From Mytilus trossulus (lineage: Eukaryota), in the NCBI RefSeq assembly GCF_036588685.1, contig NC_086373.1:93062001-93126000 (forward strand): a DNA stretch of 64,000 bases, given 5' to 3'. The position numbers were made by a program, and so were the translations under genes. Of the stretch, positions 361-45,408 are shown piece by piece (positions within the stretch are counted from its first letter, which is position 1; each line of letters starts with the position of its first letter). The notes under the pieces are model-generated. The model was given only the letters and a program-made list of their open reading frames with translations. It was not told the origin of the DNA and did not search any database.

Positions 361-2524
361 TTATATGCCAGTTTCACCTTGCTCGGTTTCTCCTGTGGGC
401 ATGTCCTGGCCGAATTCAGTGTTCTCATTTTCATTCAACTGTGGCATCATGTCAGATGGAGATGATCTAAAAATTAAAACAAGGAATTAATAAAGGAAAG
501 AAGGAAATAACTGTTTACTGAAAATGTGTTTTATTGTTACATTATAGTTCGTTTCTGTGTGTATTACATTTTAACGTTGTGTTGGTTGTTTTCTCTTATT
601 TTTGAGTTTAAATTATTGCGATAAGACGTGGCACGGTACTTATCTATCCCAAATTCATGTATTTGGTTTTGATATTATATTTGTAATTCTCGTAGGATTT
701 TGTCTGATGTTAGGTCCGTTTCTCTGTGTGTTACATATTAGTGTTATGTCGTTGTTCTTCTCTTATATATAATGCGTTTCCCTCGGTTTTAGTTTGTTAC
801 CCCGATTTTGTTTTTGGCCATGGATTTATGAGTTTTGAACAGCGGTATACTGCTGTTGCCTTTATTTACATTATGTTAAGAAGTTGATTGAAGGTTGGTT
901 GACAGTTCTATAGTATCCTTTTCATTTTTTTAAAGAAAATTTTCCACCAAACTTATTGCAGGTTAAACTGTTCAGAATTATATATTATTATATGGAATGT
1001 TTAGGAGAGATGTGAAAAAGTCGGAATAGTTTTAATCTAATGTAAAATTATAAAACAAATGAGTCTTTCATTGTGTTTTTTTTTAAATCAGCGTATGGTA
1101 TACTATTTAGACTCGTATGGACTAATTACGGATGCTTAATCCACTACATATGTTTTTAAACGACTTTCACTTGTATATGTTAGCGGAATGTTCTTTATGT
1201 AACACGTTGTTATCCAATCAACATTTAAAATCAACGTAAGTATAAAATCCTATCCAATTATGTATGAAATATATGGAGATAGACAAAAACACAAAACAAA
1301 TCATTATTTCAAATGCAACTTACCCTTCATTTTCAGGGAATGTCATGGCATGCTCACTGGAACAACGAAGACATTTGCAGTAGCAACGCCCTCTGTATAA
1401 GACTGATACATAATATCCACAGCGTTTTGCTCTACAATGGCCTTTACATCTGGAAGCACAACTTGCCTCTGCCTCATGGACTTAAACATAAAAATAAATG
1501 TAATGCGTTAATAGCTAATATAGGTATATGTTATTTGCTAATATTTCAGGGGATTGCTGTCTCATGTCTAAGCATGCCATACCTGTTCTTTTGTCATTTT
1601 ATGCAGCACTTAGTTTTTAAGTAATTTTCACAAAATGACCACAAAAAAGAGCTAAAACTTAAAGGGAGAATATTAATGACTGAATATGGTGACATAGTCG
1701 GAATGCATGCAAAAAAATATCTCCGGAGATCACATTAATGAATATTACTTTGATAAGAATAATTGATAATCTAAACCTAAATTGAAGATACAACGTTGAG
1801 ACAATGTCGATGCTCTTGGCAAAACAGAGAAATGAGTAAATCTTCATAATCATTGCCTTTGAAGGGTCTGTTTGACCAATACTAATACTGGTAGTTTGAA
1901 TCTAAAAAAATGTTTTACTCGCTGAGATGAAAGAAATCCCATTGTTTTCCATTATCCTACGTTTTTATTTTTATCTGTATCTGGTCATTTTATTTTTAAG
2001 AAATTATCGTGTTGATCGTGATTTAGACATCACATACGTAAAATGAACAAAACCATAAAACATAGGTATATTTACGACATAATATTGGTGCTGGTTTGAA
2101 ATATTTTCATTATTCATTTTTAAGACGAAATGTTTAATACGCTATAATTGATCTCATGCAGTTTTAAACTTCTTGTTAATTGATGAAATAGTCACAAATA
2201 TAAATCATTTTAACTGGAAATATTTATGAACTTCATTAACATATAGAGGTTTTGTAAATGTCACGTGCAGTTAAATGATATGAAGAGAATTGATCACACC
2301 TGTTTGTAAATTTTATAAAAGCTTAAAAAACCCTTAAAACTAAATGTCCTCATTGGAGACGCAAATACTTTACCGAAGTCGTTCTGAAGGAGAGTAAGCC
2401 AACGTAGAAAGGACATTTTAATCTGCATTAAAACATTTATATGACTAAATTAAAGTAACAAAATTATGTACATACCTGCAAGAATTGCTACAAGAGCAAT
2501 AGCCAGAATAAATGCTGCCTTCAT
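361..2524 (-). CDS. MytlB: Mytilin B-type antimicrobial peptide precursor (103 aa)
   Basis: Coding exons 2524-2476, 1480-1324 and 466-361 have GT/AG boundaries and matching phases (1, 2). Translation: MKAAFILAIALVAILAVHEAEA | SCASRCKGHCRAKRCGYYVSVLYRGRCYCKCLRC | SSEHAMTFPENEGSSPSDMMPQLNENENTEFGQDMPTGETEQGETGI. The mature peptide matches mytilin B as I recall it except R13K. Exon 2 starts at 2548; non-coding exon 1 is about 2975-2941 (donor GTAAGT); AATAAA at 236-231. Confidence 0.96.
525..868 (-). repeat. Interspersed high-copy repeat in mytilin B intron 3
   Basis: Ends in GCGGTATACTGCTGTTGCCTTTATTT. Related copies at about 1-140 (opposite strand), 4340-4590, 5135-5310 and 10080-10180. Confidence 0.7.
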
Positions 2525-7351: not shown

Positions 7352-7526
7352 AGATTTTAGTAAAAAAAGTAAAAGTAAAAAGTAAGCATCACAAAAGTCA
7401 GTTAATCGCATGAGTGTTAACGGGACCAATTATGTTACAGATTTTAGTAAAAAAAAGTTTAAAAAAAAGTTAAGCATCACAAAAGTCGGTTAATCGCATG
7501 GGTGTTAACGGGACCAAATACGTTAC
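7352..7526. repeat. Tandem duplication of about 88 bp
   Basis: AGATTTTAGTAAAAAAA...AAGCATCACAAAAGTC...GTGTTAACGGGACCAA occurs twice in direct succession. Confidence 0.85.
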
Positions 7527-7761
7527 TACATATCTAGATCCATTAAAAAAAATAATCACAAGTAATTTTTGTCACTAAATATGATTTTGAACTGTAAAAT
7601 TTGTACTTCGTTGAAACACAGTTCTACTTATAATGAATATTTATTGTATCAGAACTACAATAACAGAAATTAAATTGAAAAAGAACAATTGCATTAAACA
7701 TAAGTACTAGTATATAATTTTAAAACAGAAATGGTCATCATCACTTTATTAGACCTCCTTG

Positions 7762-10518
7762 TTATATGCCAGTTTCACCATGCTCGGCGTGTTCTTTCGG
7801 TGTATTCTCCGCGAATTCATTGTTCTCATGCGCATCCATCTGTGGAAAAATCTGAGATGATCTAAAAAAGAACGTCAATAAACTCATCATAGATACCAGG
7901 ACTAAATTTGTATATACGCAAGACGTGCGTTTCGTCTACAAAAGACTCATCAGTGACAATGGAAATTAAAAAGGTTAAAAAGGCCAAATAAAGTACCAAG
8001 TTGAAGAGCATTGAGGACCAAAAGTCCTAAAAGTTTTGCCGAATCCAGCTAAGGTTATCTATGCCTGAGGTAGAAAAGCCTTAGTATTTCAAAAATTCAA
8101 AATTTTGTAAACATATAATTTATAAATATAACCATATCAATGATAATTCATGCCAGCACAAAAAGGGCTGACTACTGGCCTTGTGATACCCTCGGATAAA
8201 TAAATCTCCACCAGCATTGGCATCGACCCAGTGGTAGCAAATAAACTCATCATAGATACCAGGACTAAATTTTGTATATACACCAGACTCGCGTTTCGTC
8301 TACAAAAGACTCATCAGTGACGCTCGAATCCAAAAAAAGTTAAAAAGGCCAAATGAAGTACGAAGTTGAAGAGTATTGAGGACCAAAAGTCCTAAAAGTT
8401 TTGCCAAAACCAGCTAAGGTAATCCATACCTGAGGTAGAAAAGCCTTAGTATTTCAAAAATTCTAAATTTTGTTAACAGGTAATTTATAAATATAACCAT
8501 TTCAATGATAATTCATGTCAGCACAAAAAGGGCTGACTACTGGGCTTGTGATACCCTTTGGGGAAATAAATCTCCACCAGCAGAGGCATCGACCTAGTGG
8601 TTGTAAATAAACTCATCATAGAAACCAGGACTACATTTTGTATATACGCCAGACACGCGTTTCGTCTACAAAAGACTCATCACTGACGCTCGAATCCAAA
8701 AAAGTTAAAAAGGCAAAAATGAAGAACGAAGTTGAAGACAATCGAGGACCAAAAGTCCTAAAAGTTTTTCCAAATCCAGCTAAGGTCAGCTATGCCTGAT
8801 GTAGAAAAGCCTTAAACAAATATTTATATATATAAAAAGTAAGAAATGAGTTAAACTTTTAGATCTATGAGGTTGATTGAAGTATACAGTTTGGCTGGCA
8901 GTGGTTATCTACTTTACTCTTGCCAAGTAAACAGTCAACTAATTTCAGATTCTGTTAGATGAAGACTTTACCATTTCCCTTCTCAATTTTATTCTAGATA
9001 GCGATACAGATAAAAAGACTGTGCATTTATAATTTATGTATCTCCACAAACCCGTCCCGTGGTTACCTTTAACCGCCTATGAAGTTTATACTACGTATCA
9101 CTTACATAATGAGACAGTTATAATTTCATGGCAATAGAAGCAATAGAAAATTGATCAAGAATCGGATCGATAGTTTTTGGATACAAAGGTTTGATTAAAA
9201 AATCAATATATCGTCTAGTGTGTTGTTTTATATGCAAATACACTGATTCGAATTGACTGAAAAATGAGACTAAATCCACTGCATATGTTAGGTAAAGACC
9301 TCAATATATTTATATTACAGATTTTATTGAGCTCTTTGGATGGTTCCGTACGGCAAGATATATCATCTATCCTTCTATTGCACATTTACAATAGAGCCTC
9401 ACTTTCAATTTTTCAACTGATGCATGCATACAATATTTTACATAGTATATTTTCTATATATTCAAATTGCAACGTACCCTTTATTTTCAGAGAATTTCAG
9501 ATTTTGCACACTTGCACAATCTAAACATCTGCAGGTGCATCGATTTCCATAAGCGAATGCTGAATAGCATTTATATCCTTTGCTTCTACATCGATTTCTG
9601 CATCTGGTACGACAATCTGCTTCTGACTCATCAACTAAAAGAAATTACAACATAGATATATCAATAAAATGTGCTTATATTGTTGTCGAATGTATAACTA
9701 TTAAACCCATAACTTTTATAAGCTTCTTTACAGGGTTTTTCGGAAAAAACATATTTGGGATCTAGATTCTTCTCGAAATGGACAAATCACATGAAAGAAA
9801 TAATTATGAAGAAACTGGGTTACCTTCGTGTAAAATTTATAAATGTTTTTTTTAAAAAAACCGCTGAATCAAATCGTCTATTTATCGAAACCACGATCCA
9901 GTTCTCTTTTTATTTGGTTCTGACGTCCCTGAATTTGTTATAGCCATAATCGATACAATATGTGCCACATGTTGAGCAGAACTGCAACTCATTTAGGGCA
10001 CATGCTATTACACCTGGGTCTAACTTAGGCTCGTCTTGCTCAGTCTTTAGTCTTTTATGAAGTGTTTTGTAGACTGTCTCTATAGTTGGTTTGATTCCCT
10101 CGGTTTTATTTTGTAACCCGGATTTGTTTTCTTTCAATCGATTTATGACTTTTGGGCAGCGGTATACTACTGTTGCCTTTGTTTGTTTTTTCGTCGTTTT
10201 TCGTGAATTACCTTGATATTGCCTGGTTTCTTTTAACACGATTTTGTTTGTTCTTCCGGTCACAATTTTGTTCATCCTTTTCATTCACAGTTTTGTTAAT
10301 ATTACGTCCCAAAAGTTCTCATACTGCAATGTGCTGTGTCAAATATTTTGCCGTTATCGTTTATTATTGATAAAAATAACACAAAAAGGACTTTACATTT
10401 TAATAAGCTGGTCAAAAGATCATGTATCATTAAGTTATAGAAACACGCATTATGTGGGGTACATACCTAGTATAAGAAGTACTGCAAGGGCAATAGTCAG
10501 AATAATCGGTACCTTCAT
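7762..10518 (-). CDS. Divergent mytilin precursor with shifted 4th cysteine (102 aa)
   Basis: Coding exons 10518-10467, 9634-9478 (157 nt, same length as in paralogs) and 7861-7762 have canonical GT/AG and an open frame. Translation: MKVPIILTIALAVLLILVDESEA | DCRTRCRNRCRSKGYKCYSAFAYGNRCTCRCLDC | ASVQNLKFSENKGSSQIFPQMDAHENNEFAENTPKEHAEHGETGI. Exon 2 starts at 10547; exon 1 is about 10960-10920. Confidence 0.9.
7876..8814 (-). mobile_element. Non-LTR retrozyme array: about 2.6 tandem units of 363-366 bp, each with a type I hammerhead ribozyme motif
   Basis: Units start at 7878, 8241 and 8607. Minus-strand consensus GCGTCA-CTGATGA-GTCT-TTTGT-AGAC-GAAA-CGCGNG-TC-TGGCGT reads as stem I, catalytic core, stem II, short near-palindromic stem III and a GUC cleavage site. 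Confidence 0.88.
8279..8325 (-). ncRNA. Minimal type I hammerhead ribozyme (best-preserved copy)
   Basis: Minus strand GAGCGTCA CTGATGA GTCT TTTGT AGAC GAAA CGCGAG TC TGGTGTA. All core nucleotides are intact, stem I pairs with G-U wobbles, and cleavage is predicted between 8286 and 8285. Confidence 0.8.
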
Positions 10519-10917
10519 ATTGGATCTCAAGGAACGTTGAAATTGATCTGAAAATAGATAAGCTGTTTCATCTTTGCAATATACAGTATGGCAAAAAAAA
10601 AAAAAAAAGAAAGATACACAGTAGACTCTATGGTGGTATCAAATACAAAATCTCAAGCAAAATTAAACGACTTAAGTAAACGGTCAAGAATACAACACTT
10701 TTATAACTTTAGTTTTTTTAAGTATCAATAGAGATTTTCTACCCCTTGCCCTGAGGTAATTATTTAGAATGCAGATGAATAAATGAAGCAGCATGTTCAA
10801 TAAGTATCTTGATACACCGTTGATGTATTGAAAAGGTATTTCCTAAGATTGATATGTTTTGATTATTATAATATGATCGTCTTCATACAGTGATACAGTT
10901 TACTTTGACAAAGTTAC

Positions 10918-15088: not shown

Positions 15089-17089
15089 TTATATGCCAGT
15101 TTCACCTTGTTCGGTTTCTCCTGTGGGCATGTCTTCGGCGAGATCAATGTTCTCGTTTTCATTCATCTGAGATGATCTAAAAAAAATGAAGAATAAAATG
15201 AATTACTTAATAAAGATTGGAAACTCATGCAAGGTAAATAGTCTATCATGTTCTATGTTGTATCATGTGTACTATTGTTCGTTTGTTTGTCCATTTAATT
15301 TTAAGTCATGGCGTTCTCAGTTTATTTTCGATTTATGATTTTGACTGTCCCTCCGGTATCTTTTGTCCCTCTCTTGGAAAAACAACTAATGTTTTTAATT
15401 CATGTTTCTCCATATGGGGATCCCTAAACCCGCCTTTGAAGTTATTAATATGTACAACTTTCATAGTGATGAAACTATAATTTCAAAGTAAGAACAGAGA
15501 TAGAAATTAATCAAAAATCTTATTTATTTATCGAATGCCAAGGTAATTAAATCGTCTAGTGTGTCTTTTATGTCTTTTATATGTGCATTTATGTGTAGAC
15601 AATATAAGTAACTAAGAAAGGAGTCTACTGCATAAATTTGGAGAGGGATTACATGAGAACATCCTAAAAATAGTTTAAATTTGCTTTTAGAATTGTTCTG
15701 TACGGCAAGATATCTCATTTATCATTGGCTAATTCAATCGGTCGAAAAGAGGGAGATGAAACAAATCACATTGACAATACAGGCTCACTTACAAATTGTG
15801 TAATCTAATGTATATATCATAGTTCACAAGGCAGCCGAAAAGTACAATATAAAGTATTATTAAACATACCCTTCATTTTCTGGGAAGTGCATGGTATGCT
15901 CACTGCCACAACGGAAACATTTGCAGTAGCATCGTCTTCCAAAACTGGCTGATGCCCAGCCTTTACAGCTTCTGCCTCTACATTTAGATTTACATCTGGA
16001 AGCACAACTTGCTTCTGACTCATGAACTAAAATAAAATAAAACATAGGTGTATCAATGAAATATGGTAATGTTAGCAAATGCATTACAAAGTCATAAATG
16101 TTTGGCTATTTTAACTGTCATAATCTTTTGACCATTTGCTTAGCACTATTTTTAAAAGTATTTTTAATTGAAGAAGTAATAAGCACGGCTGGAAGAATAG
16201 CATAAACTTAAAAAACAAGAATATTTATTACTTATTTTCGCTAGTATAGGCTTCATTCGTAGAGATATATAATATTTGTTCATATTATTTTGTTAAATGT
16301 CATAAGTCTACATAAACATGAATCGAAAATGATATGTCTTGACAAAAACAATGTTTTGAATCAATGGAAGAACATTAAGGTTTTAGTCATGATGGAAACA
16401 TAAATTACGTGACAGGATAGATACATAACATAAGACTTGTCTTGCCTAGTCGTTAGTCTTTTCTGAAGTGTTTTGTAGACTGTGTTTGTCGTCGGTTTCG
16501 TGTTTAACTGTGGTATTTTCGTTTTTTTCTTCGACTTATATATTTCAATAATTTAATTTTTGATGTAACGCGTCTTCTGATTGACTGACGTTATTTTGTT
16601 ATTAGCGCATATACATAATTTAGTCATGTGACCGTGACGTCATCAACGTTTTTTCGTGGTTTTCTAGGTTTAAAATGGAATTTAGAAGTAAATTATAAGA
16701 AATGACTGTAATATTTTTTTCTGTCTATTCGAAATAACATAAAAATGTGGTGCACACTGTTAAATAACATATTACAGTCATTCCTTAATTGTAAAGTTTT
16801 TTTTTCTTTTAACACGCTTTTGTTTATTCATCCAGTCACAATTTAGTTTCTTCCTTCCACGCACTGTTTTGTTGATATTTCGCCCTATGCACACGCGTAT
16901 TCCAATCTATTGTATCATATTATCTTTTACGCTATCGTTCTTTATAGATTAAATGAAACACAGAAAGAACATAACAATTTACTCAGCTTTTGAAAAGTTA
17001 AAATGTCATTTAATTACAGAAACCAAAATTTTGTACATACCTATAAGAAGTACTGCAAGAGCAATAGCCAGGATAACTGCTACCTTCAT
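15089..17089 (-). CDS. MytlD: Mytilin A/D-type antimicrobial peptide precursor (97 aa)
   Basis: Coding exons 17089-17041, 16026-15870 and 15176-15089 have canonical splice sites. Translation: MKVAVILAIALAVLLIVHESEA | SCASRCKSKCRGRSCKGWASASFGRRCYCKCFRC | GSEHTMHFPENEGSSQMNENENIDLAEDMPTGETEQGETGI. CKGWASASF and CYCKCFRC are the mytilin A/D signature; the exact isoform name is tentative. Confidence 0.93.
16555..16790. repeat. Small inserted element in intron 2 with internal inverted repeat
   Basis: AAGAAATGACTGTAATA (about 16697) pairs with TATTACAGTCATTCCTTAA (about 16770). Contains TGACGTCA at 16635-16642. Not seen in the paralogous introns. Confidence 0.5.
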
Positions 17090-17582: not shown

Positions 17583-19560
17583 GTTTCTATTTTGGTTTCT
17601 ATTTTGATGTCTACGACGGAAATACGTCTTGTTTTCGTACTGGTTTTTTTTTTCTGAAATCTAGGGCGTTGAAATCTTAAGTTGAACATAGAAAACACAT
17701 CAAAAATAAACGTTTATAATGAAAAATAATTCATCGTGTTTAAAGCAAAAATTTGACCTATAATTGTTAACGTATTATACATTACAATTTGTTATCCTAT
17801 AGACACTCATCCAAATCTTCGTTCAGTTGTATATCCACGAACGAGATTGTAACATTGAGAATTAATTTGGATTATTTGCGATATTCGTTATCTTTCTGTG
17901 AAAAATCTTAGCAACAATTGTAAATCTGAAGAAAGTAAAGAAAAAAAACCAAAATGGGACTGCAATCATTTAATCAAGGATCAGAACAAAGGCATGCTGA
18001 ATAAAACAACAACAAGAAACAAATACAACACATCAATCAGAAATATAAGGACAAGGCGAATCAAATCTCAAGTTATCTGAATAAACTCATCATAAATACC
18101 AGAATTGAAATTTTGTAAACAAGTTAAAAAGGCCAAATAAAGAACAAAGTTGAAGAGCTTTTTTAGACCAAAAAATCCTATTTTGTTTCCAAATACAGCT
18201 AAGGTAATCTACTCATAAAGTATAAAAGCCTTAGTATTTCAAATTAAAACAAGTCAGTAACTGTGCTTCGTTAAACACCTGATGAATTGCTTATCGGACA
18301 TGTATGATTTTTTTTTATTATAGTAACATATACAATATTAATTTCAGGTATCTCAGTAAAATTAACGAAAAAATGTTAATAGATATTTATTCATTATCAA
18401 AAACTTCATTCATTATAAAAAGTTAATATTCTTACTTGTAAAAACTAAACTAAAGTTCAAAGAACATTTTTTTTCAACTGTGATACACGTCTCTTCGAGT
18501 TGACCAAGTCGTTTTGAATGATTATATCTGAGATGACGCACGGGGAAAGCACCCAACGGTTTGTGGATAGACAACTAGAAGAAATTAATTTCTATCTAAT
18601 TCAGTTCCTTCAATAATTCATAATATTAATTCACTTAGAAACAAAAAACTATGTCAACGAGGATATCCAAATGCAATTTAGGCTCTCTTTAAACAAAGAA
18701 CATACTAGTAATATAAAACGAAAGTCAATAATATAAAAAAGACCATAGCACAATACAAGATGACGAGATAAATAAATACCGAGCATCGCAAAAAAGGTTA
18801 AAATAAAGATATATACAAAGAGAAATAATAATAAAAAAAAACCAACACTTTAGATGACGAACAATACCGTATTCAGATCGCAAGACTTTATCTCGACCAA
18901 TATGCTTCACAAGGTAAATAAGAGAATGTACAACGAAATTTGAACGTTAAAAGAACTAACCTCTATGAAATCAGCCAAAAAATTTGCAAAACAGAAGTGC
19001 TAGCAAAAAATAAAATAAAAATGAAATACAATATCAAAGAAGGATGAAATCTACTAAAAATAAGCTCAACGTACTTAACCTGCTAATTTGAAATCATGTC
19101 AAGCTTTAATCTAGTATTTTTATCTTATATAGTAACTCAATTTTTACGATATTTCTTGATGGTATGCAAGTCTAAAGTTCTTTACAAAAAACAACAATAG
19201 CGTTTAATATACTGGCGATCATATTCTACGAAAATAAGTAAAGCAATATGACATCAGATAAGGTATAACAAGACTTTTAAATTAGCATTTATCAGGAAGA
19301 ACACAGCATTGTTCTACTTCAGCAATACAAATATGTGGTGTATAAGTCAGGGGAACCCAATTGCACCCTACACGCCCTCTTCCACAAACAAACAAAAAAT
19401 GAAGAAAAAAAGAAATATTTCGAAAGAAAGTATCCAACAGCAATTAAAAGTTGACCGTTGAATAAAGCTTGTCCAGAAACTATCATCACTTAATCATCCC
19501 GTTTATATGTAACTGTACTATTACAGTCAGCATAGTACCCTTGTCCTAAAACTCGTATTT

Positions 19561-20213: not shown

Positions 20214-20777
20214 TTACATCACAGTTTCACTTTGCTCGATTTCACTTTTCTGCGTATCCTGTAATTGGTCAGTGTTCTCATGGTCTTTTGTCTGTGCTTG
20301 CATCTCAGATGGTAAGAAGATAAAATAGGACGAAAAACAGAATGGAGGAACTAATAGAATTTCAAAATCGTAACATTTAGGATGTCAAAGTAGAAGTCAT
20401 AGCATATTACTGTCAGCCATTCTCTCTTTTACCCTTGTAAAGAATATTGTCACATCTGTTCATGATAGGTTTTACTGATATGGTGTGATGAATTCAACTT
20501 GTTGAAATCAACATGATTCTAAAAACCTACAAACTGATGTATGTTAAAAAAATTAACCAATGTTAAGCAGACAGTCAACACTACATAATTGATAGATGTT
20601 TTACTAGTAATTTTAATAGATCCTTCATTTTCAGAGACTTTCATGGTACGCTCACTGGCACAACTGAGACATCTGCAGTCGCAAAACCATACTTATCTGT
20701 ATGCCAATTTTATCTACATTGTCTAGCCGTCCATTGGTATTTATAACTGGAAGTTCAACTTGCATTTGAGTCCTGGA
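20214..20777 (-). pseudogene. Mytilin C-like pseudogene (exons 3 and 4 only)
   Basis: Exon 3 remnant 20777-20622 reads QDSNA S*TSSYKYQWTARQCR, a 1-nt frameshift, then *VWFCDCRCLSCASERTMKVSENEG. Exon 4 remnant 20313-20214 reads PSEMQAQTKDHENTDQLQDTQKSEIEQSETVM*. It has two stops, three lost cysteines and all three splice sites mutated; no exon 1 or 2 was found. Confidence 0.9.
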
Positions 20778-23700
20778 TATAAACAAAATATAACAGGTGT
20801 AAAAATACAAAAAAAAAAAAAAAAAAAAGCTGGAGGTTATTTTTATTATTTCAATGTATTTTTCATTCATGTTGAAAAGTCCCATATATTCATATTCAAT
20901 TATGTGTATACTTTTTAAAAGTATTTTTGATAAAACATTATATTCTTACAGGAAAACAATTACAAATATAATTGTCATTAGAGTTCTGTATTTTTGTTGT
21001 TTTACTTTTTTACACTACGTTATTTAAATAAGAAGTAAACTATAGTGGCATTTTTTTCTTACGTCATTTTCGATTTATGAGTTTGAATGTCCCTTTTGTA
21101 TCTTTTATACCCCTCTATGCTGTTTCAATATTCTTCAACTTAGGGGACGGTCAGATCCCTTATAAACATGTTTTATCTCTACCAGGTTCTATATGTGCAT
21201 TTTTAAGTTTGCAGTCTATTGTTTAGTGGTAGCTGGTTTTTTTTGTCCGTTTTATTTGTTTTCCTTGTTTTTTGTTTTTTTAATTATTCAGGCTATTGGT
21301 ATTCTCGTTTGAATTTTTACGTATTTGTCACGTCTGGCGTTTTATAGGCGGCTCTACGGTATGGGTTTTGCACAAGGATAAAGGTCGCTATTGACCTACA
21401 TCTGCTAACATCAACGTCATGTGGACTCGGAGTTCTTCAAAACAAAGTTTTACTCTGCGTGCCATTGTGTCTTTATTTATTCTACATTGACTGGAGGAAA
21501 TAGGGGGGGGGGGTATTTGAATCTCCCCAAAAAGGGCAATTCCCGCCTTATTTTTGAGCCTTCCCAAAATCAGGAGTCTTTGAATGTTGTTTTTAAACAT
21601 TTTTTTATTCATTTGTGGTTTTGAGTTAAGTGAAAAAAAAATTTCGACCTCGGGGTGTTTTCTGCTATTTGTTCGGGTTTATTATACAATTCCTATGTAC
21701 CATACAGATCTAAAAACTTCAAAAAACTAAAAATCGGAAATACAATACTCGGCAAATTAAGGACAATTTCCAAAAACTCCAAACCAGAACAATATCCATC
21801 GTATTATCCTTCGTATCGACAATAGTACGAGAAAAGTTTCCTTTAAATCATTTTAAATCAGAAAAAAGTATGCAGACACATAACTTAAACAACTAGAATA
21901 CGTACTTTAGTCGCGAAATTTTATCTTTATGTCTGTGCATCTGTTTGTTCGTTCGTTCGCCATATTACAAGTTGAAATAGTGATTTTAGGAAAGTTAAGG
22001 TTTTTTTGTTCAATTTTATTAAAGATTTAGTAAGTGTGATCTTAATGAAATGAAATTTTTACAATATTCCCGAAAATCAAACACATAAAACGAATTGAAA
22101 ACAACTGTCATTTTTCCTTACTCGGTACAGAAATTTTTCCATCGGATAGAGACATTTAATCCGAGGTTCAGTGGTTAGGGAGTACCACGATCTTTACACT
22201 ATAAAGATCCTTTTCATCAAACTCTTTTTGTGGTCTATACTTGAAAAAAATATTTCATATTGGTTTTGGATTTGATATATTTGTCTGTGGTTTATAATTT
22301 TACTATTTGGTAATTTGGTGTTCATGGTCTAATTTATGTTTATGATGAGATCAGCCTTTTTCAATTCATGTATTTGAGCGTTTCCTTTGATGTAGTATAT
22401 GTACACCATTGTTTCAGGTAAGGGTGAAGGTTGACGCCAGATGAAACGTTCAAACCCGTTGCATTTGTTTGTTCTTTTCCTAAATCAGAAACCTAATATT
22501 CAGTGATTGTTGATTGTTGATGTGATACATAAGTGTTTCTCGTTTTTATACTGATGATACCATTGTTTTTCCTGTTTGAATGGTTTTACACTTGTCATTT
22601 TTGAAGCCACTTATAGCTTGCTGTTAGGTGTGAGACAAGGCTTCGTGTTGAAGGCCATACATTGACTTATAATGGTTTTTATTTACAATTGTAACTTAGG
22701 CGGAAAATGTTATCATTTGCATTCATACTTCACCTCCTTATATATATTACCTTATGAAAAAAAGGTGGATTAAATCTTGTTTTATAGCTTATTAAACCTC
22801 TCACATAAAATGCAGTGGCATATAATTATGTCAAATTGAACAATGTGAGAGGATAACAAACAGACTTAATTGATGAAAATGTGTGATACTGCGAATTGAT
22901 GGTGTCCTACCGTCACATACTTTTACTTTTTACTTTTTCAGGGAAAAGCAAGCTTCATTAATGATCAAAACTAGTGTTTGTCAAACTGCTGTGTAACAAG
23001 TGTAATTTTTCTGATAAAATGGATGGTTCAAATTTTTTATATATTTTCAAAGGGTCAAAGTTAATGTTTGTCAAAATTTTATGAAAATTAAACGAGATAA
23101 ATTAATTTTAGTGAAGGTGTTCTGTACCACCCTAAGTGTGATATATCAATATTGAAAACATACAATACATGTCTCGATCCAAAATAAATAACGAATTGTG
23201 TACGTTTGTACGAATATTACATAAATTTGCTATAACAGACAAATGACCATTTTGTAGAGTGGGTTTGTATGACGAAATCAGTATTTTTCATATGCATTTT
23301 GGGTCCTACATGCTCTTCAATTTTGTACTTGATTGGCGTTAAACCTATTTTAATCAAAGCGTCATTGATGAGTCTTATGTAGATGTGTCAAATTATAATT
23401 CTTGTACCTTTGATAACTATAATCGTTACTTTTGTCTATATCCGATAATTAAAAACCTGGATCTGCAACCAAATTTGAGATTTTTTTTATTTTGAAAACC
23501 TAAATTGTTATCCTTGATTTGTTATCGCCTTTTGATTTTGAAATATGGAAAATTGAAATCAGAATAACCGAAAGTTATGAAATGTAAACTGCATGTTTTA
23601 AATTGAATCACGATGGTACGTCAGTAACTATTACGACAAAAAACTACTTATCCATAGATGTAAGGAGATGCGGTATGAGTGCCAATTAGAAAACTCTCCA

Positions 23701-24264: not shown

Positions 24265-26600
24265 TTACATTCCAGTTTCACCTTGTTCGGTTTCTCCTTT
24301 CTGCATGTCCTGGAATTGCTCATGGTCATTCATCTGTGCTGGCATCTCAGCTGGTCTGAAGATGAAATATGATATATAAGAAATTGAAAAAATACATCTA
24401 GATTTGAAAAAAATTTAAAACGTGTAGGATGTTTAAGTTTACTGTCAGTCTCTTTAAATCTTTTATTATTGTCAAAAATACTGTCACCCTTGTCGTGATA
24501 AATTTTACAGGCATTATTTAATGACTTAAATACATTAAGATAACTTTAGTTTCAAAAATCATATCAACTGATGTCTATATAGGAGGCAGTCAAAACTACT
24601 TAATTAAAAAAATGCTATAAATTAGTGTTGTCAAATCGTACACTTTTTCCTAACCGGTTACTCGGATAATCGTTCGACCGATTAACCGGTTAACCGGTAG
24701 TTTACGTTGGTGTTTGAAAGCCTTATCAATAGTACCCTACACATAGATATGTATAGGTGTTAATTTGACAACCTTTCATCCAAGTCAAAAATTTACGTGT
24801 ATGATATGATTTCTGGCGCAATTTGACTTTTAATTTTCGAATACACCGTATCAACTATATATATAACGATTGTACCAACTTCAGATTGAAAAGTAAAAAA
24901 AAACTTCTTGATCTCGAGGAAAATGAATATGTCTGAAACCGATTATTCTTTCATTTTCTCTTGCTGTCTCTGAAAATAATGTAGAGTGTCTCAATAAGAA
25001 ATGATTCATTATTAAATAAAAGAAGATGTAGTACGATTACCAATGAGACAATTCCCAACAAGAGACCAAAATGACACAGAAATGAACAACTATATATAGG
25101 TTACCGTACGACCTGTTTCTTTACTTTTTTTGCTTGTCTCTTTAAGTAATGTTACTCGTTCTATCACGTATACATTGAGTACATTCACGTTGGTTGCATA
25201 TTACAATATTTGAGAAAGCATAAAAAAAGACTGAGCCTAGCACTACGGAGGTTATACATTTAGATGTATGTTTACACAATATTAGATCAAAAACGAAATA
25301 ATGAAGTAATTAGTAAATTTCAATCACATCGCTGATTTAGAGTTACTGTTAAAAAAACATGTATACTAATTATGTTTCTTTAAGATGCTGCTCGAGCTCT
25401 AATTAAGTTTTTAGAATTAACAAAAGCATTCAATATACTGAACAATTGATCTGTCAAATTAATTACCACGCCGACATATTTCAAATAAAACATAACTATT
25501 TATTGATTTTAATACACATTAATATCAAATCTTTCAAAACTTTAAAAAAAGTCCGGTTAACCGGTTAGCTTTTTTGGTATTCGGTATTCGGTCGTTCGAC
25601 CGGTTAACCGGTTAACCGGTTAATCGTTGACAACACTACTATAAATGTAACGTACCCTTCACTTTCTGGTGAGAATTTCATGGTGTGCTCGCTGGAACAT
25701 CTGAGACATTTGCAGTAGCAGAACCATCCATATCTGACTGAGACGTAATATCTACAGCGTCTGCTTCTACAACGAGATTTACATCTGGAAGCACAGCTTG
25801 CATCTGCGTCTTGGACTAAAACAAATATCACAGATGTGAAAAACGCAAAAAGGGGATATCTTTGATACTGTAGGTATAGTTTAATTGTGTAAATATCACG
25901 AGTTTTTTGTAGGTATATTCTAATATGACATCTTTCTTTCTATTTTTATAAAATTCTCGATATACCAAGCGCTGTCTCAGATCTTTGCCTAATAATGACT
26001 GTTACAATATACAGCCATAATCTTAACACTTTCCTTATTATATTTTGTTAACAAAATAAATAATACGCATACTTAATTTGTTTACTGGTTATGTAAAAAG
26101 TTATCAAAGGTACCAGGCTTATAATTTGATACGCCAGACGCGCATTTCTGAAATTGTTATAATAATAAATTGGTTGTGCTGAGCATTGACTATTCAAAAA
26201 AACAAACCAGACTCATTTCAGACATTATGCACTCCTTTTGGGCGTTCACTTTGTTTTCAAACATGAGTAATAGTTTTGCATAGTGAAGCTATGTTAAACA
26301 CACTATCATTCAATTCATAGTAACCGATGTTTTTTTTTAAAAATAGCAAAATTTAACATACATTCATCAAAACTTGTTCTTCAGGTTTTGCCCTCTCTTC
26401 TTTTTAAATTTTTTTGCAATTTGTGTTTCTTCATTTTGGCAACATTTTATTTATTCCCAGGTGAAGAAGGTAGGCTGATATTTACATTCTGATTATTAAC
26501 CAATCAGATTGAATGGTATTTGCTGCATGAGAAATACAATTATTTACATACCTATAAGAAGTACTGCAAGAGCAATAGCCAGGATAACTGCTAACTTCAT
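24265..26600 (-). CDS. MytlC: Mytilin C-type antimicrobial peptide precursor (99 aa)
   Basis: Coding exons 26600-26552, 25815-25656 and 24355-24265 have canonical splice sites. Translation: MKLAVILAIALAVLLIVQDADA | SCASRCKSRCRSRRCRYYVSVRYGWFCYCKCLRC | SSEHTMKFSPESEGPAEMPAQMNDHEQFQDMQKGETEQGETGM. SCASRCKSRC...CRYYVSVRYG is the mytilin C signature. Confidence 0.95.
24623..25638. mobile_element. Non-autonomous hAT-type transposon in mytilin C intron 3
   Basis: 12-bp TIRs TAGTGTTGTCAA / TTGACAACACTA, perfect 8-bp TSD CTATAAAT (24615-24622 and 25639-25646), and subterminal TTAACCGG repeats at both ends. Confidence 0.92.
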
Positions 26601-36184: not shown

Positions 36185-36312
36185 TAGGTCCTCAACTTTG
36201 TACTTGTTTGGCATTTTAACTGTTTTTATATGAGCGCCACAGATGAGTCTTATGTAGCCGAAACGCGCGTCTGGCGTATTAAATTATTATCCTGGTACCT
36301 TGATAACCATTT
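36185..36312 (+). mobile_element. Solo retrozyme fragment with a mutated hammerhead core, nested in another repeat
   Basis: GCGCCA CAGATGA GTCT TATGT AGCC GAAA CGCGCG TC TGGCGT carries U4A and a stem II mismatch. It splits the host repeat motif CTCCTGACTT..GGGACAGGCGC. Confidence 0.7.
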
Positions 36313-37861: not shown

Positions 37862-38682
37862 CATATGCTCTTCAGCTTTGTACTTTTTTTACTCTTTTTA
37901 ACTTTTTTTTTATTCGGCGTCACTAATGAGTCTTATATAGACGGAACGGACGTCTGGTGCAAATATAAAATTTAAATCCTGGTATTTATGATGAGTTAAC
38001 TTACAACCACTGGGTCGTTGCCACTGCTGGTAGAGTTTTTATTCCCCGAGGTTATCATCAGCCCAGTAGTCATAGCTTTTATTTTGACATGAAATATCAT
38101 TGATAAGGTCATTATCATAAATGAACTGTTTACAAAACATTGAATTTTTGAAATACCAAGGCTTTTTTTTACCTCAAGAATATGATACCGTAGCTATATT
38201 TGGCAAAACCTTTAGGAAATTTTCGTCCTAAATGCTCTTCAGCTTCGTACTTCACTTGGCCTTTTGCTTAACTTGTCACGATTCGAGCTTCACTGGAAAG
38301 TCTTTTATAGACGAAACGCGCGTCCTAGAATCAATGCCGATGAGTTTATTTACAACCACTGAATCGATACCACTGCTATTGGAGTTTTTTCCCCAAGGGT
38401 ATCACCAGCTTAGTTGTCATCGCGTCTGTGTTGACATGAAATATCATTGACATGGTCATAAATTTGAATTTTTGAAATACTTAGGCTTTTCTACCTCATG
38501 AATAGATTACCTTCGCTGTATTTTGCAAAAGCTTTAGAAATTTGTCACCTCTTCCACTTCGTTCTTATATGATTTTTTTAAAATTGTTTTGATTCGAGCG
38601 TCACTGATGAGTCTTTTGAAGACGGAACGTGTGTGTGGCGCAAAAATTAAATTTCAATCCTGGTATCTATGATGAGTTTATA
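37862..38682 (+). mobile_element. Older, degenerate retrozyme array (same family as 7876-8814, opposite strand)
   Basis: Reverse-complement homology to the intronic array. Three decayed hammerhead motifs at about 37915-37960, 38283-38325 and 38596-38641, each with core substitutions. Confidence 0.8.
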
Positions 38683-39206
38683 TATATACTATTTTTTTTT
38701 AATTCTAAACAGATATTTTTTTTCAATTTCATCAAGCGCAGCACACTATAATATGACCGAATCCAGTCATCTTTTTATAAATTTTGATTCGATACAGCAT
38801 CTATCTTTAATTATCCCCCCAACAAAATAGATGGAAAGGAGTATGTATACGAATGCTCGTATATGATCAATTCTAAATATGATGTATTTTGCAGCATTAG
38901 TTGTTAGTGCTATTAAACTCTGTATTCAACATATATTGATTTCGCTCTAATTTAATAATGTCAGCAGATGGGTAGTTTAGTACATCATTACCGAAGAGAC
39001 ATCTTTGTAGAGAATATGTCTGCTAAAGCTTAGCGGACACTAACGGTTACAGTCCCTTGCGAATTTGTAATCCTTGTCTCAGAAGTGCATATATAGGTGG
39101 TCTCTAGATAGAAGGTTGCTACGTACAACTAAAAAAATAATAGCCCCACTCCCCCCAGTTTCAGTGAGGTTCGATTCTGATCAATCTTTAGGTTTATATT
39201 TAATAT

Positions 39207-42200
39207 TACGGTGACAATTAAGGTAAATTAAAACATTAATGCACCGAAATACCTCACGGCTAGTTTTGGTCTTATTTTGAAGATAAATATAATACCCTTC
39301 TATTAAGGCATGTCGTAGAATGCCAAAGTGGTGCAGATTTTTGATAATTGCGATTAAAGGTTAAAAGGGGGGACTTTAAAAAATCGGAATTTTTGGACAT
39401 TTTGGACGATTTCTCGGTAGTCGCTCATGATAACTGAGAAAAAAATTCAATGGAAGCAAGCTCTAAGGGTGCTGCAGAAATTCAGCTTCTAATATTTATG
39501 CCAGATTGACATAGATTAGTGATGTTCACACCCGCAGCCAATATGGAAGAAAATGATAAAGATTATCTTTATTTACAAAAATTATCGATAAAAAATATTT
39601 ATATTTAATATTCAGCTTTGCAATAATATATTACAATAGATAAAGATATTTTTGGGAAAGTTTTGTTAAGATACCATAAAGAATAAAGGAGAAGTTAGTA
39701 TGTAAAGTTTACACCCAAATTCATTATTCCTTTTTGAAATAAAAAAATAATGTTGAAATTATAAAAATAGTCTTGATGCATAACTGTCAGCATGAACACG
39801 ATAGTATATGAAGTTTTATTGATGACAATAGGTCAACCAGTCTAAGAGTAATATCATTTTGAAAATGCATGACGATGTGTGCATCCCCCTTTTTTTATAA
39901 AACAACGCAAACAACAAAACATCAAGAGTAGACTTTTGACTTTTACCGTTTTAAAGCACTATATATATCACACAAACACGATTTACAGAAATTTTGATAC
40001 AAATGAAGATATTTGTGTATATTTCAATAACATTTGACATTATTATGCACGTCCGATGATTTGAAGTGGTTACGAAAAAATAACACAAAAAAGTACATGT
40101 TATACTTCTAAATTATTTGATAAAGTTTGCAGTTGGTTTACAAGCATGCAAACCTGTTGCAATACCGCCGTTTCCCTTCGAATCTGTGATTATAGTCTTC
40201 TCTGTTGCCATATCACTCCATATGCCATTGAATATACCAGGCTTTTGTCTGACTGCAAACTTTCAGGACATGAAAGCTGAATAAGTGTCTTTTGGGAGAT
40301 TCAGCATGTCAATTAAATAAGCTGGTGTCCACCTAGCATAATTTGTTTTGTTTGCAAGAAGAAACAAGGCAACATAGAAGACACGGATTGGAGGTGTAAA
40401 GTCCAATCTCCATCACGTTCTGCTTTGACATTCATAATCATAACGTCAACGGCTCGTAAAAACATTTCCCAAAATTTAAAATTGAAGATGCTTTATAAGA
40501 AAACTCTCTGAACTCCGAAATCAACGAAGATAACTGTTCCCGGAAAAGAATTAAAAATTCAGAGAGATCTAATACCTTTGTATTAAGGTCACTGAATGCA
40601 TCATGACAAGAAAGCATTGTTTGCCAGTATTTTCGTCTATGCTAGCAATTTTTCGTTGGTTTGAACACCATTGAAAAAATTTCTTGAACCATAATGCCAT
40701 CACAGTTTCATATGCTAATGTGTAAGCTCTAACACCGCGATTAAACTGCTTGCCTTAGAGAATCTGATCTACAGTTACTGTACATCCTGCAAATGCACCC
40801 GAATCGACCAATAAATCCCGAAGCCCAGCCATATTTTGCCTATTGCTGAAATGTAACTAGAAACCATGTGAAATCAACATAATCTAACAACGTGTGGGTG
40901 AAAAATCTGAGGCATAGACCACTTTACTTGTTGGGCTATGGCATAAAGCTGTTGGTCGAAGGTCTGTTCTGGGTTATTCTGACCTGCGGCCTTTGACATT
41001 TCTACGCATTTTACAATTGTCGTATATACTGTCGCCATGTCAGCAGTTTTTGCGTCTATGATTGGAGGATATGCAACGACGACATGAATGTTTTTTTGGT
41101 CGGAAAGTCTTTTGTAAAAGCCTGTCCAAAAAGGTATCATTTGTTTTTTATCATTTTAAAACCAATGTAGTTCAACAATGTCGCGTGTAAGTGATCGGAG
41201 CAATACCCAAGCCTTATCAGACACGTTAGATTTATTGGTTGCACATGATTCGATTTGGCAGTATGGCTCGGTACATTTAGGTGGGCCGAATCTTTCCTTA
41301 GGCTTATAGAAAGGAAAACATGACATGAGACTAGAAGTGTTTTCATCCATAGTTTCTGCATTAATATCAACGTTGTCAGACCCGTCTTGAATGAAGTCTC
41401 CACCTGAAATTTTAGAACATATTCAATTGGGGATGTATGTTTCATTTTGGGAACTTATAATTTCATGGTTAGCTGAACTAGTCAGAAATTGTCTAACCTC
41501 AGTGTAAGACGCACAAAAGCCATGCGAATGTAAAGTTTCAATAAGATTTTTAGAACCATAATCATGATGCAACTGAAGAGCCAATGATAAACTAAAAGGT
41601 GTAAACTATTTTTTTATGCAGCGATATCACACACTCGACTAAAGCAATACATTTCCGTACTGTATCACCTGAGAGTGAATTGAAATCATTCTCCATATGA
41701 AAATAGTTATCATCTATTACTAGTAATCTGGCAAGAAAGTTTATCAAAGAGGTAGGTATGAATTGTAGCCGTAGAGATAGAAACTTCCGAAGGAGATGGA
41801 TAAAATTCAGCCGAAATTTTGAAGGATTGTAAACTGCTTCTCAAAATGTTTGCAGCATCATGTAGGGTCTGATCTTCTTGATGTATGGAATCATTAACAA
41901 AACTGGTTTTCATCTCAGAAAATTCCGCTTTTAAACTACTGGCAGCGCGAATAGCCTCAGAAACACCGATAGAGCTACTGAAAATCATATTTGATTTACC
42001 CTGTCCTCTTTGAGACTGAACAACAAAGCGATCACCGTAGTGATTTTTCAGTTTGTGTTGCAGTTTATAAGTTGTATATCTACTTCTAATTTCTTGTGGG
42101 AGAGTGGAACAATACGTGTCTAGTAAATTCGACAACGAAAATGCTTTCTTATTAAAAAACAGATCATCGTGTAGAACTTCCGTCAGGTTCTTGAAAGCAA

Positions 42201-44693: not shown

Positions 44694-45408
44694 ATGGGTG
44701 GATTGAGTGCTCACAACGATTTGAACCACATGGCATTCCTGGAAAGTACGAGAAATATGTTCTCTATCATATATAAGTGCTATCAGAAATCGAATTTTGT
44801 AGTAATATTTTTTGTCGTCAAGTTTAGTTTTGGACCGACCTCGAATTCAATGACAATTTCAAATGAAAGTAAACAAATAAGAAAATTTAATATTGTTTAG
44901 CTAATCAAATTTACGGGTGAATGTAGCGGAATTTGATGAGACTGTTATTAAAGTGAGAGGGTTAGCGCTATAGAACCAGGTTTAATCCACCATTTTCTAC
45001 ATTTGAAAATGCCTGTACCAAGTCAGGAATATGACAGTTCTTGTCCATTCGTTTTTGATGCGTTTTGTTTCTTGATTTTGCCATGTGATTATGGACTTTC
45101 CAAATTGATTTTCCTCTGAGTTCAGTATTTTTGTGATTTTACTTTTTACCTCATAGCTTTACATTTAACATACATTGTTTTAAATGTGGATAATTAACGT
45201 GTTTTACATACTCCTGATGTTCTATTTATCTATTGAAATTAATAACAGTATACACAAACCGTTGTGAACGTCCTATATATGATATAGATAAGATAATGTG
45301 AATTAGGAAATACCTGTCTACCTTATCTTGTTAAGTTTGGCATTCATTTATTGAAATATTAATTACACACTGTATATGTCATATTGTTCCTTAAACAAAC
45401 TAAACATC

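What the first reader, a model, noticed from the sequence alone, without database searches (positions are those of the whole stretch)
9516..9617. Mytilin with a relocated disulfide cysteine (C15 to C17) while keeping eight cysteines
Seen: the mature peptide DCRTRCRNRCRSKGYKCYSAFAYGNRCTCRCLDC has Cys at 2, 6, 10, 17, 27, 29, 31 and 34, whereas the three other intact genes have 2, 6, 10, 15, 27, 29, 31 and 34. Relative to the A/D-type neighbour, TGT became TAT (C15Y) and GGC became TGC (G17C), each a single-base change. Established: in mytilin B the fourth cysteine pairs with the last one (C15-C34). Inference: a compensatory pair of mutations rewired this bond to C17-C34, giving a new disulfide geometry on the mytilin fold. 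Net charge is +7, against +9 to +10 in the paralogs.
Basis: partly seen in the sequence, partly recalled or inferred. Interest (0 to 1): 0.82.

Follow-up and report, generated by a model that had tools for sequence, protein, structure and literature searches.

The report
Mussel mytilin with shifted fourth cysteine
This is a real, transcribed mussel antimicrobial-peptide gene of the mytilin family in which one of the eight bridge-forming cysteines sits two residues later than in every other mytilin compared here, a modest new variant whose disulfide bonding is still untested.

Summary
Window 9516-9617 (minus strand) encodes the 34-residue peptide with Cys at 2, 6, 10, 17, 27, 29, 31 and 34. Three neighbouring mytilin genes have Cys15 instead.

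The peptide lies in exon 2 of an intact three-coding-exon gene. Its product is identical to RefSeq XP_063407324.1, an "uncharacterized protein" of Mytilus trossulus, 102 aa. It has the usual three parts: signal peptide, cationic mature peptide (+7) and anionic tail (-5).

Contigs of three probable RNA runs from two studies carry the exon 2-exon 3 splice. One of them confirms the Tyr15 and Cys17 codons, so this is neither an assembly error nor a silent gene.

On a tree the gene falls with the canonical mytilins, not the pseudomytilins, and has the longest tip. AlphaFold2 predicts the mytilin B backbone (TM 0.86 to 2EEM), with Cys17 as the first residue of strand 1.

The C4-to-C8 separation is 19 residues in all 11 comparators and 17 here. 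I found no paper describing this, and no second protein with this array.

The "two compensating mutations" account is too simple. The nearest paralog differs at 22 of 34 residues, with replacement changes far outnumbering silent ones. The C17-C34 bond is plausible but unproven.

Verdict: a new variant of a known kind, of modest interest.

The parts
10467..10518 (-). Coding exon 1: ATG plus the first 17 signal-peptide codons (MKVPIILTIALAVLLIL) and one base of codon 18. The donor is G|GTATGT.
   Evidence: tblastn of P0001 is 100% identical over residues 1-17; sequence read.
9635..10466 (-). Intron 1 (GT...AG).
   Evidence: Sequence read. The exon ends follow from the exact fit of P0001. I did not see this joint itself in the rows that read laying printed.
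9478..9634 (-). Coding exon 2: the end of the signal peptide (VDESEA), the whole 34-residue mature peptide and the start of the C-terminal extension (ASVQNLKFSENKG).
   Evidence: Contigs of X6, X7 and X10 end this exon at 9478 and join it to 7861.
9516..9617 (-). Mature peptide, 34 residues. Cys array C-X3-C-X3-C-X6-C-X9-C-X-C-X-C-X2-C; net charge +7; calculated pI 9.27; calculated monoisotopic mass with four disulfides 4022.68 Da.
9573..9575 (-). Codon 15, TAT (Tyr), where every comparator has Cys.
   Evidence: Unchanged in the X7 transcript contig.
9567..9569 (-). Codon 17, TGC: the relocated fourth cysteine. Predicted to be the first residue of beta-strand 1.
   Evidence: Unchanged in the X7 transcript contig.
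7862..9477 (-). Intron 2, 1616 nt, GT...AG on the minus strand. It holds a 365-bp unit repeated 2.6 times (7877-8814).
   Evidence: The joint 7861|9478 'skips 1616, CT..AC' in X6, X7 and X10; tandem repeat.
7762..7861 (-). Coding exon 3: the anionic C-terminal extension (SSQIFPQMDAHENNEFAENTPKEHAEHGETGI) and the TAA stop at 7762-7764. An AATAAA follows 11 nt downstream, at 7746-7751.
15908..16009 (-). Mature-peptide region of the nearest paralog (A/D-type mytilin, canonical Cys15). The two genes align over the exons, parts of the introns and the 3' UTR at about 69-74% identity.
1362..1463 (-). Mature-peptide region of a mytilin B-like gene (canonical array).
25697..25798 (-). Mature-peptide region of a mytilin C-like gene (canonical array).
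20609..20803 (-). Broken mytilin exon-2 copy. It has stops and a frameshift in the 5' half, and only the ...CDCRCLSC tail is still in frame.

Best explanation
This is a functional, transcribed, fast-evolving paralog within the tandem mytilin gene cluster of a Mytilus genome; its product is identical to a Mytilus trossulus RefSeq protein. The precursor is made like any mytilin. A signal peptide is cut after ...SEA, a 34-residue cationic cysteine-stabilised alpha-beta peptide folds with four disulfides, and an anionic C-terminal extension is removed. The three core bonds are expected to be unchanged: C2-C27, C6-C29 and C10-C31, which tie the helix to strand 2. The fourth, accessory bond to the C-terminal Cys34 has had its other anchor moved from the helix-strand loop (position 15) to the first residue of strand 1 (position 17). 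A shift of exactly two residues keeps the side chain on the same face of the sheet as residue 34, the face away from the helix, so Cys34 remains the only sterically sensible partner. Shown here: the sequence, the gene structure, transcription and splicing, family placement, uniqueness of the spacing among the comparators, and the predicted backbone. Inferred: the signal-peptide and C-terminal cleavage sites (by homology), the C17-C34 pairing, antimicrobial activity and haemocyte expression.
For: The peptide and codons are verified. The three exons match P0001 = XP_063407324.1 at 100%. Pfam PF10690 scores 62.9 bits against a cut-off of 28.5. phmmer against 1.84 billion representatives finds only mytilins and pseudomytilins, with the best hits at E 2.5e-18 and 2.4e-17. 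The GT-AG joint 7861|9478 appears in contigs of three probable RNA runs from two studies and two organism labels. The own genome has only one copy of exon 2, so a retrocopy does not explain those contigs. All seven other cysteines are kept despite 65% residue divergence from the nearest paralog. AlphaFold2 gives pLDDT 90.7 with H2-13, E17-23, E26-32. The canonical control gives H2-12, E17-23, E26-32. The top Foldseek hit is 2EEM, mytilin, with TM 0.86 and rmsd 1.4 A over 34 residues. With a two-residue turn at 24-25, residues 17 and 34 fall on the same sheet face as 15; this is an inference. PMC7168163 shows that this scaffold tolerates moved or extra cysteines (C5 in mytilins K, L and N and in Perna; nine Cys in mytilin K).
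Against: No disulfide map, peptide detection or activity data exist. In the predicted hairpin register, residue 17 lies opposite residue 32, not 34. A C17-C34 bond is therefore diagonal, roughly 8 A between alpha carbons in an ideal ladder by my own geometric estimate, and needs the free C-terminal dipeptide to bend back. The model's confidence is a little lower at the C-terminus than in the control (87 against 92 for the last block). The runs are only guessed to be RNA, their tissue is unknown, and contig depth over exon 2 is low, about 2 to 19. Only one annotated protein with this array exists among about 15 billion, so conservation across species is shown only indirectly, through coded runs of organisms B and C.
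Confidence: 0.7

Rival explanations
1. Relaxed or decaying paralog. The gene is transcribed but the C4-C8 bond is effectively lost. C17 and C34 stay free or scramble, and the Cys at 17 is a chance substitution among many.
For: The tip branch is the longest of the canonical group (0.94). The peptide differs from the nearest paralog at 22 of 34 residues, its charge is lower (+7), and it has Asp at positions 1 and 33. Contig depth is low. A dead copy lies in the same cluster. Only one annotated protein exists.
Against: The reading frame, all splice sites and the stop are intact, and the seven other cysteines are kept. The excess of replacement over silent changes (pN 0.39, pS 0.10, non-coding about 0.28, Fisher p 0.016) exceeds the neutral level, which relaxation alone does not give. 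The new Cys lies exactly two residues from the lost one, on the same predicted sheet face. By my rough estimate, the chance that a random replacement makes a Cys at that one site is a few percent.
Confidence: 0.15
2. Different wiring. C17 takes part in another pairing, either an altered intramolecular topology or an intermolecular bond that makes dimers, so the peptide is structurally a new class.
For: In the predicted register C17 faces L32, not C34. PMC7168163 proposes intermolecular bonds for the outward-pointing extra Cys of Perna mytilins.
Against: The cysteine count is even. C27, C29 and C31 face the helix and have their usual partners C2, C6 and C10 in place. The backbone is predicted unchanged.
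Confidence: 0.1
3. Pseudomytilin-family member, or a mosaic made by gene conversion from a pseudomytilin, suggested by the shared CRTRCR start.
For: CRTRCR is shared with the pseudomytilin-2-like genes on another contig (L005, L006) and with the PM sequences in Table 1 of PMC7168163.
Against: On the tree the pseudomytilins are split from all other rows, this gene included, with 100/100 support. The Arg codons of the motif differ: CGT..AGA here against AGA..CGT in the pseudomytilins. The C-terminal extension ends in ...GETGI like canonical mytilins. The gene lies inside the canonical cluster and aligns with its A/D neighbour through the introns.
Confidence: 0.03
4. Assembly or sequencing artefact at codons 15 and 17.
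For: None found.
Against: The X7 contig reproduces both codons. The differences printed for X2, X6 and X10 also lie outside them, though each of those contigs has one difference that was not printed.
Confidence: 0.01

Closest known systems
Mytilin B (PDB 2EEM) and the canonical mytilins A/D, C, G1 and M
   Same: The same three-part precursor and the same 34-residue length. Seven of the eight cysteines are in identical positions. The same cluster and exon layout. The predicted backbone has TM 0.86 to 2EEM. It is the only PDB sequence hit.
   Different: C4 is at 17, not 15, giving C3-X6-C4-X9-C5 instead of X4/X11. Only 35-44% of mature residues are shared. Charge is +7 instead of +9 or +10. Asp sits at positions 1 and 33.
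Mytilins K, L and N and most Perna mytilins ('alternative cysteine array', PMC7168163)
   Same: A precedent that one cysteine of the mytilin scaffold can move while eight are kept. Mytilin K has nine cysteines, so a nine-Cys state is tolerated.
   Different: There it is C5, the partner of C1, that moves onto strand 1, often with a longer C1-C2 loop. C4 keeps its 19-residue distance from C8 (P0005 and P0006). Here C5 is canonical and C4 moves.
Pseudomytilins (Mgal PM2/PM3, Mcal PM; L005 and L006 in this genome)
   Same: They share the CRTRCR start, G14, Y18, A20 and G24.
   Different: They have a canonical Cys15 and an unrelated, weakly charged C-terminal extension, lie on another chromosome-scale contig, and are separated on the tree at 100/100.
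Mussel defensin MGD-1 (from memory, not tested here)
   Same: It is also a four-disulfide alpha-beta peptide with C1-C5, C2-C6, C3-C7 and C4-C8 pairing (array stated in PMC7168163). As I recall its sequence, C3 and C4 are six residues apart, as here.
   Different: It is a different family with a much shorter C4-C5 segment and a different precursor. The spacing resemblance is a lead only.

Membership tests
Mytilin family (Mytilus CS-alpha-beta antimicrobial peptides) | Three-part precursor: signal peptide, cationic cysteine-rich mature peptide, anionic C-terminal extension | tested here: met
   P0001 is 102 aa. Mature peptide +7; extension +1 (exon 2 tail) and -6 (exon 3), net -5. Cleavage sites are inferred by homology.
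Mytilin family (Mytilus CS-alpha-beta antimicrobial peptides) | Significant sequence similarity to known mytilin precursors | tested here: met
   phmmer E 2.5e-18 to P0002, whose mature peptide equals Trichomya mytilin 2 of PMC7168163 Table 1, and 2.4e-17 to P0003, whose mature peptide equals Mgal mytilin M. PF10690 scores 62.9 bits.
Mytilin family (Mytilus CS-alpha-beta antimicrobial peptides) | Canonical array C-X3-C-X3-C-X4-C-X11-C-X-C-X-C-X2-C (PMC7168163) | tested here: not met
   The spacing here is 3, 3, 6, 9, 1, 1, 2. The family as now defined already admits alternative arrays (K, L, N), so this makes it a non-canonical member rather than excluding it.
Mytilin family (Mytilus CS-alpha-beta antimicrobial peptides) | Eight cysteines | tested here: met
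Mytilin family (Mytilus CS-alpha-beta antimicrobial peptides) | Gene layout and position among other mytilin genes | tested here: met
   Three coding exons with the same phase-1 split of the signal peptide. The gene lies between B-like and A/D-like genes on the same strand and aligns with the A/D gene through introns and UTR. PMC7168163 gives four exons; a non-coding exon was not resolved here.
Mytilin family (Mytilus CS-alpha-beta antimicrobial peptides) | CS-alpha-beta fold | tested here: met
   By prediction only: pLDDT 90.7, one helix and two strands, TM 0.86 to 2EEM.
Mytilin family (Mytilus CS-alpha-beta antimicrobial peptides) | C1-C5, C2-C6, C3-C7, C4-C8 disulfide connectivity | not testable with these tools
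   No coordinates or chemistry were available. Needs MS or NMR mapping.
Mytilin family (Mytilus CS-alpha-beta antimicrobial peptides) | Haemocyte expression and antimicrobial activity | not testable with these tools
   Spliced contigs show transcription. The tissue is unknown and there is no assay.
Pseudomytilins | Groups with pseudomytilins and has their divergent, weakly charged C-terminal extension | tested here: not met
   The tree splits them at 100/100. The extension here is the canonical type ending in GETGI.

The most novel reading that the evidence does not exclude
The relocated cysteine makes a diagonal cross-strand C17-C34 staple, or forces a shift in hairpin register or a different pairing. 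Either would give the mytilin scaffold a distinct C-terminal and hairpin geometry and a changed activity spectrum. It would have arisen under positive selection and would be carried by only some Mytilus lineages or individuals.
Probability: 0.15. Interest if true: 0.5.

Novelty: new variant of a known kind. Interest (0 to 1): 0.35.

Why it matters
Mytilins are a standard model of invertebrate cysteine-stabilised antimicrobial peptides, and mytilin B fragments have been used as design templates. Known variation in the family touches C5, extra cysteines or loop lengths. The distance from C4 to the C-terminal C8 is otherwise constant. A natural, expressed mytilin that moves C4 by two residues without changing length offers a test of how freely the accessory fourth disulfide of this fold can be re-anchored. 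It can be compared directly with canonical paralogs of the same genome. It also adds one unnamed member to the mytilin repertoire and an apparent case of rapid adaptive divergence after tandem duplication. It does not change how the family is understood.

Tried and rejected
- **The search for related loci, metagenome contigs, with P0001:** 197 pattern matches, none confirmed.
- **The search of earlier findings (near, by words, whole genome):** nothing bearing on this locus.
- **Paper search for three 9-residue motifs of the peptide:** no paper. Supplementary files and non-open papers are not covered, so this is weak evidence of absence.
- **Word-index protein search:** a single hit, P0001 itself.
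- **Phylogeny within the canonical mytilins:** unresolved, with all inner forks open except the pseudomytilin split, so 'derived from the A/D type' rests on DNA similarity only.
- **Indels as the cause of the shift:** rejected. The length is unchanged and the ungapped alignment keeps K16, aromatic 18 and 23, G24 and R26 in register.
- **Pseudomytilin membership:** rejected.
- **Spliced model:** Full-length analyses used the database protein P0001, which matches the three window exons at 100%.
- **Structure models:** no atomic coordinates were returned, so I could not measure the C17-C34 distance.
- **Read laying limits:** it allows one call, and 48 difference rows were not printed. Contigs X2, X6 and X10 each have one unlisted difference within or near exon 2. 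Only X7 is fully accounted for.
Full report

Translating window 9516-9617 on the minus strand gives the quoted 34-residue peptide, with cysteines at 2, 6, 10, 17, 27, 29, 31 and 34.

A six-frame scan for the mytilin cysteine pattern finds four intact copies on the minus strand:
- 1362-1460, B-like
- 9516-9614, this one
- 15908-16006, A/D-like
- 25697-25795, C-like

A fifth exon-2 copy at about 20609-20803 is broken by stops and a frameshift.

The A/D-type neighbour has TGT at codon 15 and GGC at codon 17; this gene has TAT and TGC. Net charge is +7 against +9, +10 and +10.

**2. The gene**

The peptide lies in exon 2 of a complete gene on the minus strand:
- Exon 1, 10518-10467, carries the ATG and 17 signal-peptide codons and ends G|GTATGT.
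- Exon 2, 9634-9478, carries VDESEA, the mature peptide and ASVQNLKFSENKG.
- Exon 3, 7861-7762, carries the acidic tail ending ...GETGI and a TAA stop, with AATAAA 11 nt downstream.

The word-index protein search with the stop-to-stop frame around exon 2 returned one protein, P0001. It is 102 aa and is RefSeq XP_063407324.1, "uncharacterized protein LOC134691053 [Mytilus trossulus]". tblastn maps it onto the three exons at 100% identity.

The window is G000:C1:93062001-93126000 of a 1.30-Gb assembly in 541 contigs. The protein's source contig is 113 Mb long. The window is therefore from M. trossulus or something nearly identical to it.

The C-terminal extension has net charge -5. Pfam PF10690 (Myticin-prepro) matches P0001 at 62.9 bits against a cut-off of 28.5.

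**3. Is it an artefact, and is it expressed?**

The sampled words of exon 2 are held by ten public runs from six studies. I laid four of them on 7500-10700.

Contigs of X6 and X7 (organism A, a different study from the likely source run) and of X10 (organism C) each skip exactly 7862-9477. That is a 1616-nt gap bounded by GT...AG on the minus strand, and it joins exon 2 to exon 3.

The own genome contains exon 2 only once. These contigs are therefore spliced RNA, not a retrocopy.

The 396-nt X7 contig covers all of exon 2 with three differences:
- 9600: silent, Cys6
- 9576: silent, Gly14
- 9522: Leu32 to Phe

Codons 15 and 17 are unchanged. In exon 3 the same transcripts differ at 7811, 7799 and 7793. 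By my reading of the codons these give A87V, P91R and E93G.

A DNA contig of X2 (organism B) covers 9402-9606 with one difference that was not printed.

Caveats: the RNA label of these runs is a guess by the tool, the tissue is unknown, and contig depth cannot rank expression.

**4. Family placement**

HMMER against 1.84 billion cluster representatives gave only eight hits at E <= 0.001:
- P0001 itself.
- Five mytilin precursors. The mature parts of P0002 and P0003 equal Trichomya hirsuta mytilin 2 and M. galloprovincialis mytilin M in Table 1 of PMC7168163. P0004 is canonical, P0005 has the eight-Cys alternative array described for mytilins L and N, and P0006 has nine cysteines as described for mytilin K.
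- One pseudomytilin, P0007.
- One weak hit to a long protein.

The peptide starts with CRTRCR, as the pseudomytilins do. Two pseudomytilin-2-like genes lie on contig C10 of the same genome (L005, L006). However:
- A maximum-likelihood tree of the exon-2 region separates the three pseudomytilins from all other rows, this gene included, with 100/100 support.
- The arginine codons of the motif differ between the two groups.
- The C-terminal tail is of the canonical type.

Within the canonical group the tree is unresolved. This gene has the longest tip, 0.94.

At the DNA level its best match is the A/D gene. They align over exon 1 and the start of intron 1 (74%), exon 2 and its flanks (72.5%), patches of intron 2, and exon 3 with the 3' UTR (69%). 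It is therefore an old tandem duplicate of that lineage.

**5. How unusual is the spacing?**

PMC7168163 gives the canonical array as C-X3-C-X3-C-X4-C-X11-C-X-C-X-C-X2-C. It describes variation in the position of C5 (mytilins K, L and N and most Perna mytilins), an extra cysteine (the Perna CCC motif, mytilin K) and one loss of C8. It does not describe a move of C4.

In the 11 comparators I hold by reference, the distance from C4 to C8 is always 19 residues (15 to 34, or 19 to 38). Here it is 17.

I also counted by eye on Table 1 of that paper. The 19-residue distance holds there too, including for sequences whose C3-C4 loop differs by indels, such as Thir mytilin 1 (X2) and Mcal mytilin 6 (X5). 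The one exception is Pcan mytilin 7, which has a longer hairpin.

So the family varies the loop before C4 but keeps C4 in register with the hairpin and C8. This gene breaks that register without changing length.

No paper in the searchable library holds the peptide's motifs. The protein's 90% cluster has one member.

**6. How it probably arose**

The two codon changes are real, but they are two among many. The mature peptide shares 12 of 34 residues with the A/D neighbour.

Nei-Gojobori counts for the mature region are 32 replacement differences in 81.8 sites (0.39) against 2 silent differences in 20.2 sites (0.10), Fisher p = 0.016. Aligned intron and UTR differ by about 0.28.

Replacement change above the non-coding level points to positive or diversifying selection on the mature peptide. 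This rests on 34 codons and one pair of genes.

All seven other cysteines were kept throughout. The order of loss and gain cannot be told from these data. Because mytilin K carries nine cysteines, a nine-Cys intermediate is the more comfortable route, but that is an inference.

**7. How it probably works**

AlphaFold2, run on a 12-row alignment, gives pLDDT 90.7 with helix 2-13 and strands 17-23 and 26-32. The B-like control gives 93.4 with helix 2-12 and the same strands.

The best Foldseek match in the PDB is 2EEM, synthetic mytilin, with TM 0.86 and rmsd 1.4 A over all 34 residues. The high E-value only reflects the small size. The other listed matches, all far weaker, are mostly scorpion toxins and plant defensins. 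2EEM is also the only PDB sequence hit.

With a two-residue turn at 24-25, residues pair as i + j = 49. Cys27, Cys29 and Cys31 then face the helix and their partners C2, C6 and C10. Residues 15, 17, 32 and 34 lie on the other face.

Moving C4 by exactly two residues therefore keeps it on the same face as Cys34, which remains the only sensible partner.

In this register residue 17 sits opposite residue 32. A 17-34 bond is therefore diagonal and needs the unstructured C-terminal dipeptide to bend back. By my own geometric estimate the alpha carbons would be about 8 A apart in an ideal ladder, more than a disulfide usually spans.

I had no coordinates to measure this. I put C17-C34 at roughly 60-70%.

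**8. Verdict**

- The gene is real, intact and transcribed.
- It is a non-canonical member of the mytilin family, already in RefSeq as an unnamed predicted protein, and I did not find it described.
- It is a new variant of a known kind, of modest interest to specialists in mussel immunity or disulfide-rich peptide design.

Noticed in passing
window 20609-20803 (minus): A dead mytilin exon-2 copy between the A/D-like and C-like genes. A stop stands at the place of the first cysteine, there is a frameshift, and only the ...CDCRCLSCASERTMKVSENEG tail is in frame. It is closest to the B and C types over its whole length.
   Followed up: partly
window 7877-8814 (intron 2 of the gene); related pieces at 37865-38684, 18080-18243, 36188-36304 and 23298-23383: A 365-bp unit repeated 2.6 times. 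Its summed contig depth in a DNA run is tens to hundreds of thousands, so it is a very abundant dispersed or satellite repeat of these mussels. It is also present in contigs of the probable RNA runs.
   Followed up: no
window 10389-10602: In the three probable RNA runs the summed contig depth over exon 1, the 5' UTR and the start of intron 1 is 2,300 to 27,000. Over exon 2 it is about 2 to 19, and the DNA run X2 has no depth at 10389-10602. The paralogs in this window are only 70-81% identical there, so highly expressed sister mytilins do not obviously explain it. Unexplained.
   Followed up: no
L005:1516-1617 and L006:1516-1617 (G000 contig C10, about 29.05 and 29.07 Mb): Two pseudomytilin-2-like genes about 16 kb apart on a different chromosome-scale contig from the canonical mytilin cluster. 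Their mature peptides differ from each other at one residue (V or F at position 11) and from the published Mgal PM2 by Q22E.
   Followed up: partly
window 9522, 7811, 7799, 7793: Transcript contigs carry replacement variants: L32F in the mature peptide (X7 and X10), A87V (X6, X7, X10), P91R (X7) and E93G (X6, X7) in the acidic tail. X2, the DNA run of organism B, also carries the three tail variants. Only two silent differences were seen in exon 2. L32F appears under two different organism labels.
   Followed up: partly
window 41710-42561 (minus) and 45376-45918 (plus): These are the only two open frames of 180 aa or more in the window. Neither matches a Pfam family.
   Followed up: no
window 7352-7526 and 47522-47721: Two short tandem duplications, 88 bp x 2 just downstream of the gene's 3' end and 99 bp x 2.
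   Followed up: no
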